This document shows, in pieces, positions 25,302 through 25,876 of a stretch of 64,000 bases of DNA. Both the position numbers and the translations under genes were made by a program. The stretch comes from Diadema antillarum. Lineage: Eukaryota. Under the pieces are notes generated by a model that did not search any database, had not been told where the DNA came from, and was given only the letters and a program-made list of their open reading frames with translations. Location: positions 868,001 to 932,000 of the forward strand of contig NW_027271872.1 of assembly GCF_040938485.1 (NCBI RefSeq). Direction: 5' to 3'. Positions within the stretch are counted from its first letter, which is position 1; every line of letters starts with the position of its first letter.

Positions 25302-25876
25302 TTATACAAATAGTGAATGGTCACGAGTGTAATGGTACAAGATTTCGCACGAGGTGAAAGATAGAGGCGCTCTATTCAACGAGGCGAAGCCGAGTTGAAT
25401 GGTGCGCCTCATCTTTCACCGAGTGCGAAATCTCGTTCCATTGCATGAGTAAAGACCATACACTATTTGTTTTATACAACACCTCGAACGTCAACAGATT
25501 TGGTACTCACAGATTCTTGAATTTAGCACAGAAATGGCAACCATTTTCCGTGAAAGACGAATGAGTAGCCTCACAGTCGCAGTCACTGTATATATGTGTA
25601 CGTACGTACATGCGCTATGCGAAACAAAGTTGTTTACAAAAATGAGTGACAAAAGTATGCGCTTGTAAGCGCGCTTGTAATTGTTGAGTGCGCGCGGCAC
25701 ATGTTTGTTTATTGTGACATCAGAGCGCGTGCAATAGAACATTTTGGTCAAACTAAAATTGCACAGCAGAGACGTAGACAGCCAGAGCGTGCAATAGAAC
25801 GTTTCCCTAAATGTCATGTGATGGGCAATCGACCAATCGGATAGTTACATTCTAAATAGGTGTTGTATAAAACAAA
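25302..25876. mobile_element. Unclassified hairpin-bearing element (A'-hairpin-A-body-A')
   Basis: ~180-bp foldback at 25302-25484; perfect 19-bp inverted repeat 25466-25484 / 25858-25876; interrupts a CAGTG-type MITE. Confidence 0.55.

What the first reader, a model, noticed from the sequence alone, without database searches (positions are those of the whole stretch)
25302..25484. Strand-specific hairpin with three tandem G.A mismatches and a GCGAAGC apex
Seen: the + strand folds into a ~180-nt stem with the apex GGC-GAA-GCC (25383-25391). The stem is broken by symmetric GA/GA mismatches three times: 25381-82 vs 25392-93, 25351-52 vs 25421-22 and 25325-26 vs 25447-48, nearly always as cGAg opposite cGAg. 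Established: d(GCGAAGC) is an exceptionally stable ssDNA mini-hairpin, and tandem sheared G.A pairs stabilise stems. On the opposite strand these become a TTC loop and TC/TC mismatches. Inference: three matching mismatches are unlikely to be random decay. The fold appears maintained on one strand, pointing to an ssDNA (or RNA) intermediate recognised by a recombinase or nuclease (tyrosine-recombinase/Crypton-like or HUH-type), not an ordinary cut-and-paste MITE.
Basis: partly seen in the sequence, partly recalled or inferred. Interest (0 to 1): 0.72.

Follow-up and report, generated by a model that had tools for sequence, protein, structure and literature searches.

The report
One-strand hairpin of Crypton transposons
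This sea-urchin hairpin is the conserved end structure of a gene-less copy of a Crypton (tyrosine-recombinase) jumping gene, and its G.A mismatch blocks and GAA tip sit on the same strand from sea urchins to scallops, which suggests these poorly understood elements are handled as folded single-stranded DNA.

Summary
Window 25306-25470 folds into a 69-pair hairpin with a C-GAA-G tip and three tandem G.A blocks. It is not a free-standing MITE. It is the left part of a 567-bp ORF-less element (25303-25869) with at least 2,400 candidate copies in Diadema antillarum, and all three blocks read CGAG/CGAG in the family consensus.

The element is an internal-deletion derivative of CryptonA transposons, which encode only a tyrosine recombinase. 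A Diadema setosum Crypton carries the same hairpin at 97% identity. A D. antillarum Crypton shares both termini.

Across 10 lineages, 22 of 24 two-by-two internal loops are Y-GA-R/Y-GA-R on the strand antisense to the recombinase gene (for the two ORF-less lineages, the homologous hairpin-first strand), and none is TC/TC. These lineages come from sea urchin, sea cucumber, starfish and scallop. The tips are GNA triloops. Meanwhile 39 of 73 stem pairs covary.

The right arm runs into a "splint" complementary to the joined ends around a TATA core. A folded single-stranded DNA substrate is therefore the best reading, but it is inferred, not shown.

I found no description of this in the searchable literature. 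The scan had already noted the hairpin-plus-splint layout on other DNA of this genome (s1-208686, s1-229790, s1-229741, s1-220894).

The parts
25303..25869 (+). Whole ORF-less (non-autonomous) Crypton-derived element, 567 bp. The + strand is the G.A strand.
   Evidence: Boundaries come from 27 aligned copies whose flanks are unrelated. There are at least 2,406 candidate copies.
25303..25306 (+). Left TATA, one of the two 4-bp direct repeats and the presumed crossover core.
   Evidence: T, A and T are invariant in 25 of 25 copies and the final A is present in 22 of 25.
25306..25470 (+). Long hairpin of 69 predicted pairs.
   Evidence: Covariation.
25325..25326 (+). Outer G.A block, left arm. 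It pairs with 25447-25448.
25351..25352 (+). Middle G.A block, left arm. It pairs with 25421-25422. This block is GA/GA in all five aligned Cryptons.
25381..25382 (+). Inner G.A block, left arm. It pairs with 25392-25393.
25385..25389 (+). C-GAA-G triloop, part of a GGC-GAA-GCC mini-hairpin.
   Evidence: The motif is described in PMC13037366.
25392..25393 (+). Inner G.A block, right arm.
25421..25422 (+). Middle G.A block, right arm.
25447..25448 (+). Outer G.A block, right arm. The context is tGAg in this copy and cGAg in the consensus.
25461..25484 (+). Splint. It reads CACTATTTG (pairs with the 5' end), a TTT bulge, the TATA core, then CAACACCT (pairs with the 3' end).
   Evidence: I2, I3. 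The circle-junction fold lengthens the stem by 11 bp.
25485..25857 (-). Body. It is homologous to the 5' non-coding (promoter-side) region of autonomous Cryptons and includes an E-box-like site and a CCAAT motif at about 25814-25839.
   Evidence: Local alignment scores are 35 and 40, against shuffles of 16 +/- 2.4 and 16 +/- 2.9 with maxima of 23.5 and 26.
25858..25869 (+). 3' terminus AGGTGTTG plus TATA, complementary to the distal half of the splint.
   Evidence: The J-type Crypton has the same end at L064:5845-5856.

Best explanation
SHOWN. The hairpin is the conserved cis-acting end structure of CryptonA transposons, whose only gene is a tyrosine recombinase. The window copy is an internal-deletion, ORF-less derivative. 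It keeps the Crypton's promoter-side end, the hairpin, the splint and both TATA-bounded termini.

INFERRED. The hairpin works as folded single-stranded DNA of the strand antisense to the recombinase gene. On that strand a GNA triloop and up to three Y-GA-R/Y-GA-R blocks would be expected to give a continuous, unusually stable helix carrying recognisable irregularities. The complementary strand would carry TNC loops and TC/TC mismatches instead. The sheared G.A geometry is taken from model oligonucleotides.

The splint pairs with both element ends. In a circular or folded single strand the stem therefore runs across the joined ends and presents the TATA crossover core as duplex DNA with a TTT bulge opposite. 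The recombinase would bind this folded site and exchange strands at TATA with a TATA target. This parallels integron attC sites or CTX-phage attP, or a 'peel-and-paste' from a replication fork. Replication would complete the event. The source of the single strand is unknown.
For: Identity of the element:
- A D. setosum Crypton (L085:3139-5324, ORF 413 aa) has a hairpin 97.2% identical to my family consensus over 178 nt.
- Contigs of D. antillarum and a second species leave my element at 25480 into that Crypton's splint sequence (table 7).
- A D. antillarum Crypton (L064:3193-5856, 436-aa ORF) has a hairpin about 70% identical to the window copy (71% to the family consensus) and both termini identical. 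Its ORF matches DUF3504 and Phage_integrase and keeps the conserved R...HxxR...H...Y motifs.
- The body of my element is homologous to the Cryptons' 5' non-coding region.
- Copies are bounded by TATA on both sides with unrelated flanks.

Strand-specific design:
- 22 of 24 2x2 loops in 10 lineages are GA/GA in a Y-GA-R context, and none is TC/TC.
- Loops are C-GAA-G or C-GCA-G in 8 of the 12 lineages examined.
- The G.A strand folds better than its complement in 13 of 14 rows.
- The recombinases of the D. antillarum families are only 31-56% identical to each other.
- The same design lies downstream of the ORF in Holothuria, Patiria and Pecten.
- Block positions are 22/48/77 in sea urchin and sea cucumber and 48/77 in starfish, with the loop at 82 in all three.

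Covariation: 95.1% of cells are paired, and 39 of 73 pairs have compensatory changes. None of 500 shuffles reaches this, and slid controls give 2-5. The G.A columns stay GA/GA in 12 of 15 cells.

Chemistry: only GNA triloops form DNA mini-hairpins, which are far more stable than the RNA form (PMC13037366). CGAG opposite CGAG forms C:G, sheared G:A, A:G, G:C blocks (PMC10085684).

Splint: in-silico circle junctions extend the helix. Mine goes from -67.7 to -79.4 kcal/mol, and the D. setosum Crypton reaches -125 kcal/mol with about 47 extra pairs. A natural head-to-tail junction in Holothuria folds the same way.
Against: - No single-stranded molecule, circle junction read or empty site was observed.
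- Crypton family A has a perfect palindrome with no G.A blocks. Family D has its apical module inverted, with a TTC loop and TC/TC.
- The very young J family (99-100% identical copies) has AA/GC at the innermost block.
- The predicted energy advantage of the G.A strand is small, 0.2-8 kcal/mol.
- All lineages share ancestry, so counts per lineage are not independent events.
- Arm complementarity of a DNA palindrome could also be kept by gene conversion. That would not, however, preserve the G.A blocks.
- The structures are minimum-free-energy predictions only.
Confidence: 0.6

Rival explanations
1. Canonical double-stranded Crypton pathway. The element excises as a double-stranded circle. The palindrome is a double-stranded protein-binding platform, or extrudes as a cruciform (a Holliday-junction mimic) for the recombinase. 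The GA/GA asymmetries only mark orientation or limit palindrome instability.
For: A double-stranded circle is the published model (PMC3212892). The joined ends create a 10-bp perfect palindrome, TTGTATACAA, which resembles a small recombinase core. Family A works, or worked, without G.A blocks. Family D tolerates an inverted apex.
Against: A 4-bp Y-GA-R word is too short to be a duplex binding site. Its flanking Y and R covary across the arms so as to keep intra-strand pairs, for example TGAG with CGAA. GNA triloops and sheared G.A blocks have no meaning in duplex DNA. Orientation marking would not need the same chemistry at three sites across phyla.
Confidence: 0.2
2. DIRS-like route. The Crypton is transcribed and copied by a reverse transcriptase supplied in trans. 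The G.A strand has the polarity of first-strand cDNA. The splint acts like the DIRS internal complementary region to circularise that cDNA.
For: The G.A strand is antisense to the ORF. The splint is complementary to both ends, as a DIRS ICR is (ICR described in PMC13465315). Earlier notes of this scan report many DIRS elements in this genome; I did not check that.
Against: No reverse transcriptase is encoded: there is one ORF in L064. The promoter-like motifs lie inside the element about 400 bp upstream of the ATG, so a transcript would lack the terminal sequence. In my family the splint holds only 12 nt of that end, too little to restore it. The TATA direct repeats fit site-specific recombination.
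Confidence: 0.08
3. RNA-level role. The hairpin acts in a transcript, as a 3'-UTR or terminator structure or as a small-RNA precursor, and not in transposition.
For: The hairpin lies downstream of the ORF and would be in a read-through transcript. Tandem G.A pairs are also stable in RNA (my own knowledge). The only Rfam echo is a sub-threshold long-hairpin miRNA model, 29.7 bits against a gathering score of 500.
Against: On the mRNA strand the motifs become UC/UC and UNC, which are not stabilising. The triloop C-GNA-G is a DNA-specific stable motif. The hairpin base is the element terminus itself and continues into the end-complementary splint, which ties it to recombination. No RNA run held the stretch, though that is weak evidence.
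Confidence: 0.05
4. Ordinary MITE of a DDE transposon with a TA target, or a Helitron/Helentron-type rolling-circle element.
For: Both ends carry TA/TATA. There is a large subterminal palindrome, as in Helentrons (my own knowledge).
Against: The only long elements sharing the ends and the hairpin encode a tyrosine recombinase and nothing else. The terminal inverted repeat is only 5-7 bp. There are no 5'-TC or 3'-CTRR ends.
Confidence: 0.02

Closest known systems
CryptonA transposons and their non-autonomous derivatives (Kojima and Jurka 2011, PMC3212892; Glomhopper paper 2026, PMC13465315)
   Same: The partner encodes only a tyrosine recombinase with a DUF3504-like region. There are 4-bp direct repeats at the ends and abundant ORF-less derivatives. 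NCBI names the ORF 'KIAA1958 homolog'.
   Different: Those papers state that animal Cryptons have no terminal repeats and mention no hairpin or palindrome. Here there is a conserved 165-200-nt strand-specific hairpin plus an end-complementary splint.
Integron attC sites and CTX-phage attP(+): folded single-stranded substrates of bacterial tyrosine recombinases (my own knowledge)
   Same: A tyrosine recombinase is involved. One strand folds into an imperfect hairpin whose irregularities identify the strand, and the core lies inside the stem.
   Different: Those systems are bacterial, with short hairpins and extrahelical bases rather than G.A blocks, and a known source of ssDNA. None of this is demonstrated for Cryptons.
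DIRS retrotransposons: inverted terminal repeats plus an internal complementary region
   Same: There is an internal segment complementary to both element ends, and the enzyme is a tyrosine recombinase.
   Different: No reverse transcriptase, RNase H or methyltransferase is present. The two arms abut as one hairpin instead of sitting at opposite ends.
d(GCGNAGC) mini-hairpins and (Y-GA-R)2 sheared tandem G.A / CGAG blocks (PMC13037366, PMC10085684)
   Same: The sequence motifs are exact: GGC-GAA-GCC, or GC-GCA-GC in other families, and CGAG opposite CGAG. The review notes such mini-hairpin sequences at the replication origins of ssDNA phages.
   Different: Those are model oligonucleotides, phage origins and a human promoter. 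In the papers I could search they have not been reported as transposon end structures.
IS200/IS605 (IS608) subterminal hairpins and parvovirus/AAV terminal hairpins (my own knowledge)
   Same: These are strand-specific DNA hairpins at element ends that are recognised as single strands. The flip/flop inversion of parvoviral hairpins resembles the inverted apex of family D.
   Different: They use HUH enzymes rather than a tyrosine recombinase, and the sequences are unrelated.

Membership tests
Crypton (CryptonA), non-autonomous derivative | The autonomous partner encodes a tyrosine recombinase with the R-H-R-Y catalytic residues and no other enzyme. | tested here: met
   The L064 ORF (436 aa) matches DUF3504 at 4.4e-08 and Phage_integrase at 8e-07. 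It is the only ORF of at least 100 aa apart from two short ORFs (113 and 123 aa) that lie entirely within it. RGRE, HSLRAT and GH..Y motifs are conserved in six homologues.
Crypton (CryptonA), non-autonomous derivative | Termini and subterminal sequence are shared with an autonomous element. | tested here: met
   The hairpin is 97.2% identical to D. setosum Crypton L085. Both ends and the splint are identical to those of L064. The body is homologous to the 5' non-coding region.
Crypton (CryptonA), non-autonomous derivative | Short (4-6 bp) direct repeats at both ends, with no long terminal repeats. | tested here: met
   TATA is present at both ends in nearly all of about 26 copies, and the flanks are unrelated.
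Crypton (CryptonA), non-autonomous derivative | Excision and integration by site-specific recombination through a circle. | not testable with these tools
   No empty site or circle-junction contig was recovered.
Tc1/mariner-type or other DDE MITE | Terminal inverted repeats, a target-site duplication and a DDE transposase partner. | tested here: not met
   The terminal inverted repeat is only 5-7 bp, and the partner is a tyrosine recombinase.
Helitron / Helentron | 5'-TC and 3'-CTRR ends (or Helentron ends) and a Rep/helicase partner. | tested here: not met
   The ends are TATAC... and ...TTGTATA. No Rep/helicase partner was seen; the only ORF is the recombinase.
DIRS retrotransposon | Reverse transcriptase/RNase H together with inverted terminal repeats and an internal complementary region. 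| tested here: not met
   A splint like the ICR is present, but no reverse transcriptase is encoded.
Folded single-strand recombinase site (attC / CTX attP type) | An imperfect hairpin conserved on one strand only. | tested here: met
   22 of 24 2x2 loops are GA/GA and none is TC/TC, relative to the ORF strand. Covariation.
Folded single-strand recombinase site (attC / CTX attP type) | Recombination actually uses single-stranded DNA. | not testable with these tools
   This needs biochemistry or a strand-specific assay.
d(GCGNAGC) mini-hairpin and (Y-GA-R)2 sheared G.A block | Sequence motif: a GNA triloop closed by C-G on a G/C stem, and GA opposite GA flanked by a 5' pyrimidine and a 3' purine. 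| tested here: met
   All 22 blocks are Y-GA-R. Loops are GAA or GCA in 8 of the 12 lineages examined.
d(GCGNAGC) mini-hairpin and (Y-GA-R)2 sheared G.A block | Sheared geometry and extra thermal stability. | not testable with these tools
   This needs melting or NMR measurements of both strands.

The most novel reading that the evidence does not exclude
Animal Cryptons do not move as plain double-stranded circles. They move through a folded single strand. A GNA-tipped hairpin reinforced by G.A blocks, together with an internal splint, assembles the recombination site from one DNA strand. That would make Cryptons the first eukaryotic transposons known to use a tyrosine recombinase on single-stranded DNA, a counterpart of integron cassettes and CTX phage. 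It would also suggest a structural link to the DIRS internal complementary region.
Probability: 0.4. Interest if true: 0.85.

Novelty: new variant of a known kind. Interest (0 to 1): 0.7.

Why it matters
To my knowledge Crypton transposition has never been reconstituted, and the papers I read describe the ends as featureless. A cis-structure conserved from echinoderms to molluscs gives concrete substrates for biochemistry. Its apex and termini are better conserved than the recombinase protein: a 33-nt apex is identical between sea urchin and sea cucumber, whose recombinases are 75% identical. It also offers a simple signature for annotating Cryptons and their very abundant ORF-less derivatives, and a testable hypothesis about the strandedness of the intermediate. 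Finally, it is a natural case where two classic DNA single-strand motifs, GNA mini-hairpins and sheared tandem G.A pairs, appear to be under selection together.

Tried and rejected
- Helitron/Helentron and HUH partners. I considered these first because of the large subterminal palindrome and dropped them once the ends and the partner ORF were known.
- A Tc1/mariner MITE with a TA duplication. Dropped for the same reason.
- An empty site through paralogues of the surrounding repeat. Their similarity stops at 25269, before the insertion point.
- Empty-site or circle-junction contigs in four runs. None appeared among the joints listed, and all runs are contigs rather than raw reads.
- RNA evidence. 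No RNA run held the stretch.
- Rfam. Nothing reached a gathering score.
- Wider sampling of the genome's roughly 72 Crypton loci. As a result several families were seen only within +/-1.5 kb, and no hairpin was found for the families represented by L050/L055, L052, L056 and L037, nor in L033/L039, which are family A by recombinase sequence.
- No hairpin was found within +/-4 kb of the homologues in Lytechinus, Mizuhopecten, Clytia and the fish Thalassophryne. These may be degraded or domesticated copies.
- A MAFFT alignment that included families C and I was out of register. The covariation counts therefore use the five sequences that align cleanly.
- I built a majority consensus of the 556-nt ORF-less family, but only inside scripts, to read the state of the G.A columns.

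Full report
**1. Observation**

The GAA loop lies at 25386-25388 and is closed by C25385-G25389. GA doublets lie at 25381-82/25392-93, 25351-52/25421-22 and 25325-26/25447-48.

Folded as single-stranded DNA, the + strand gives -59.0 kcal/mol, with z = -13.25 and 0 of 200 shuffles as good. The - strand gives -56.4 kcal/mol. The three GA/GA loops are the only 2x2 internal loops in the stem.

**2. What the hairpin belongs to**

A search of the window's own genome gave 2,406 first-look candidates. The 40 that were scored are 93-100% identical and all run past the right edge of the query. Comparing 27 copies with their flanks shows that the repeat unit is window 25303-25869. It begins TATACAAATAGTG and ends AGGTGTTGTATA, and the flanks are unrelated.

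In the majority consensus all three blocks read CGAG opposite CGAG. The tGAg in the window copy is a C-to-T change at 25446.

Contigs of four public runs from two organisms hold thousands of copies. No variant reaching 10% was listed at any of the 12 G.A positions, although only the best-supported rows are shown.

The genome is Diadema antillarum. A 436-aa ORF from it is 100% identical to an NCBI protein of that species, on a contig of matching length.

**3. The splint**

The right arm does not stop at the base of the stem. It continues as CACTATTTG-TTT-TATA-CAACACCT (25461-25484). The first part pairs with the element's 5' end and the last part pairs with its 3' end (pairs I2 and I3).

Earlier notes of this scan (s1-208686, s1-229790, s1-229741) describe the same 'hairpin and splint' layout in Cryptons of this genome. 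That gave me the lead to look for a tyrosine-recombinase partner.

**4. The partner**

Scanning the genome with DUF3504, the Pfam family derived from Crypton recombinases (PMC3212892), gave 72 matches.

- **L064:3193-5856 (2,664 bp).** This element begins TATACGAATA. Its hairpin is about 70% identical to the window copy (71% to the family consensus). It has the same splint and ends in GGTGTTGTATA. Its ORF of 436 aa is the only one of at least 100 aa apart from two shorter ORFs nested inside it. The ORF lies on the opposite strand and matches DUF3504 and Phage_integrase. The conserved arginine, HxxR, histidine and tyrosine motifs are present. This family is very young: the 40 scored of its 785 candidate hairpin copies are 99-100% identical.
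- **D. setosum L085:3139-5324 (2,186 bp, 413-aa ORF).** This is a closer partner. Its hairpin is 97.2% identical to my consensus over 178 nt and carries all three CGAG/CGAG blocks. The D. antillarum protein P0015 falls in the same 90% cluster. D. antillarum contigs diverge from my element at 25480 into exactly that Crypton's splint sequence (table 7).

The 370-bp body of my element is homologous to the non-coding region upstream of the recombinase gene in both Cryptons. Local alignment scores are 35 and 40, against shuffles of 16 +/- 3.

The window element is therefore an internal-deletion, ORF-less Crypton derivative. It is a mosaic: the hairpin is of the 413-aa type, while the far end is of the L064 type.

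**5. Is the G.A design maintained, and on which strand?**

I oriented every hairpin so that the strand antisense to the recombinase ORF is read. Ten lineages carry G.A blocks:
- my family;
- D. antillarum families J, B, C, I and E, whose recombinases are only 31-56% identical to one another;
- the second ORF-less element in this window;
- Cryptons of Holothuria leucospilota, Patiria miniata and Pecten maximus.

In these lineages 22 of 24 two-by-two internal loops are GA opposite GA, and none is TC/TC. All 22 have a 5' pyrimidine and a 3' purine. The flanking bases change in a paired way, for example TGAG with CGAA.

Of the 12 lineages examined, six have the loop C-GAA-G and two have C-GCA-G. 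The G.A strand folds better than its complement in 13 of 14 rows.

Block positions on the left arm are 22/48/77-78 in Diadema and Holothuria and 48/77 in Patiria, with the loop at 82-83 in all three. A 33-nt apex is identical between my consensus and the Holothuria Crypton.

In a five-sequence alignment (two Diadema lineages plus the window copy, Holothuria and Patiria), 95.1% of cells are paired. Compensatory changes occur in 39 of 73 pairs. None of 500 shuffles reaches this, and partners slid by 1-3 columns give only 2-5. The G.A columns stay GA/GA in 12 of 15 cells.

Gene conversion between the arms could keep a palindrome complementary, but it would erase the G.A blocks rather than preserve them.

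**6. Exceptions**

- Family A (L036, L053) has a perfect palindrome with no G.A block.
- Family D (L040:493-2776) keeps a G.A-type outer block, but its apical module is inverted, giving a TTC loop with TC/TC beside it.
- Family J has AA/GC at the innermost block.
- The lineages share ancestry, so the counts are not independent trials.

**7. Chemistry from the literature**

Of all 64 triloops, only GNA forms the DNA mini-hairpin. GCGAAGC melts at about 76 degrees C, is much more stable than the RNA version, and occurs at the origins of single-stranded DNA phages (PMC13037366). CGAG opposite CGAG forms a 'CGAG block' of C:G, sheared G:A, A:G and G:C with cross-strand stacking, the general pyrimidine-GA-purine motif (PMC10085684).

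On the recombinase mRNA strand these motifs become UC/UC and UNC. The motifs therefore point to single-stranded DNA of the antisense strand more than to RNA.

**8. Mechanism (inferred)**

I joined the 3' end to the 5' end through a single TATA in silico. The stem then lengthens across the junction. It gains 11 pairs in my family (-67.7 to -79.4 kcal/mol) and about 47 pairs in the D. setosum Crypton (-125 kcal/mol). A TTT bulge lies opposite the TATA core. A natural head-to-tail junction in Holothuria folds in the same way. The joined ends also form the 10-bp palindrome TTGTATACAA.

My best reading is that a folded single strand presents this site to the recombinase, which then exchanges strands at TATA with a TATA target. 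The origin of the single strand is unknown. It could be a replication fork, a nicked circle or something else.

The rivals are:
- a purely double-stranded or cruciform role;
- a DIRS-like cDNA route, which fits the strand polarity but not the missing reverse transcriptase;
- an RNA role;
- a DDE or HUH element, which is excluded.

**9. Comparison with what is known**

Kojima and Jurka (PMC3212892) wrote that animal Cryptons have no terminal repeats. They described non-autonomous derivatives, and the paper does not mention a hairpin or palindrome. A 2026 CryptonA paper repeats that Cryptons have only 4-6-bp direct repeats and that some families lack any repeat description. Searches combining Crypton with hairpin, palindrome, stem-loop, single-stranded DNA or internal complementary region found no description of this structure. 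Repbase and Dfam could not be consulted.

As a transposon, the element is a new member of a known kind. The conserved single-strand-type hairpin with G.A blocks and a splint is a variant of Crypton architecture that I could not find described. The scan itself had already met the layout on other DNA of this genome. This report adds three things:
- the G.A/GNA chemistry and its fixed positions;
- the covariation count;
- the identification of the partner Cryptons for this family.

**10. Limits**

- All structures are predictions.
- No raw reads or RNA runs were available.
- No empty site was found.

Noticed in passing
window:48758-49313: A second ORF-less element, unrelated in sequence, has the same layout. 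Its hairpin at 48761-48905 carries CGAG/CGAG and TGAA/TGAAA blocks. Its splint is complementary to the far end near 49300. Near that end it shares the short motifs GATGGGCAA and GACCAATC with my element.
   Followed up: partly
window:25162-25987: The Crypton-derived element lies inside a roughly 0.8-kb element with Tc1/mariner-like ends, TACAGTGGACACTCGTT and its inverted copy. The whole 1.6-kb block is duplicated at 95% identity on another contig (L002).
   Followed up: partly
L040:493-2776; L063:3013-3093; L061:3098-3148: In Crypton family D the apical part of the hairpin is inverted relative to all other families (TTC loop, TC/TC), while the outer block stays G.A-type. This is a flip reminiscent of parvoviral flip/flop hairpins.
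   Followed up: partly
copies L002-L030, right flanks; also L085 and L064: The right flank has A at +1 in 24 of 26 copies and TA at +9/+10 in most. The left flank tends towards A-W-T-A-N. This suggests a target preference beyond TATA. Several copies lie next to the ends of other Crypton-type elements.
   Followed up: no
P0015/P0079 versus P0020; L085 versus L078: The recombinases of Diadema and the sea cucumber Holothuria leucospilota are 75% identical, and their hairpins are 77% identical. That is unusually high for two echinoderm classes. It could reflect strong constraint or horizontal transfer.
   Followed up: no
L078:3000-7400: The Holothuria locus holds at least four hairpin copies within 9 kb, including a head-to-tail junction of two elements separated by a single A.
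   Followed up: partly
window:35751-35877: A near-perfect palindrome with a roughly 60-bp stem and no G.A blocks. It is unrelated to the Crypton hairpins.
   Followed up: no
L036:2643-2738, L053:2600-2679: Crypton family A has a perfect 42-pair palindrome downstream of its ORF with no G.A block or GNA loop, so the design is not universal among this genome's Cryptons.
   Followed up: partly
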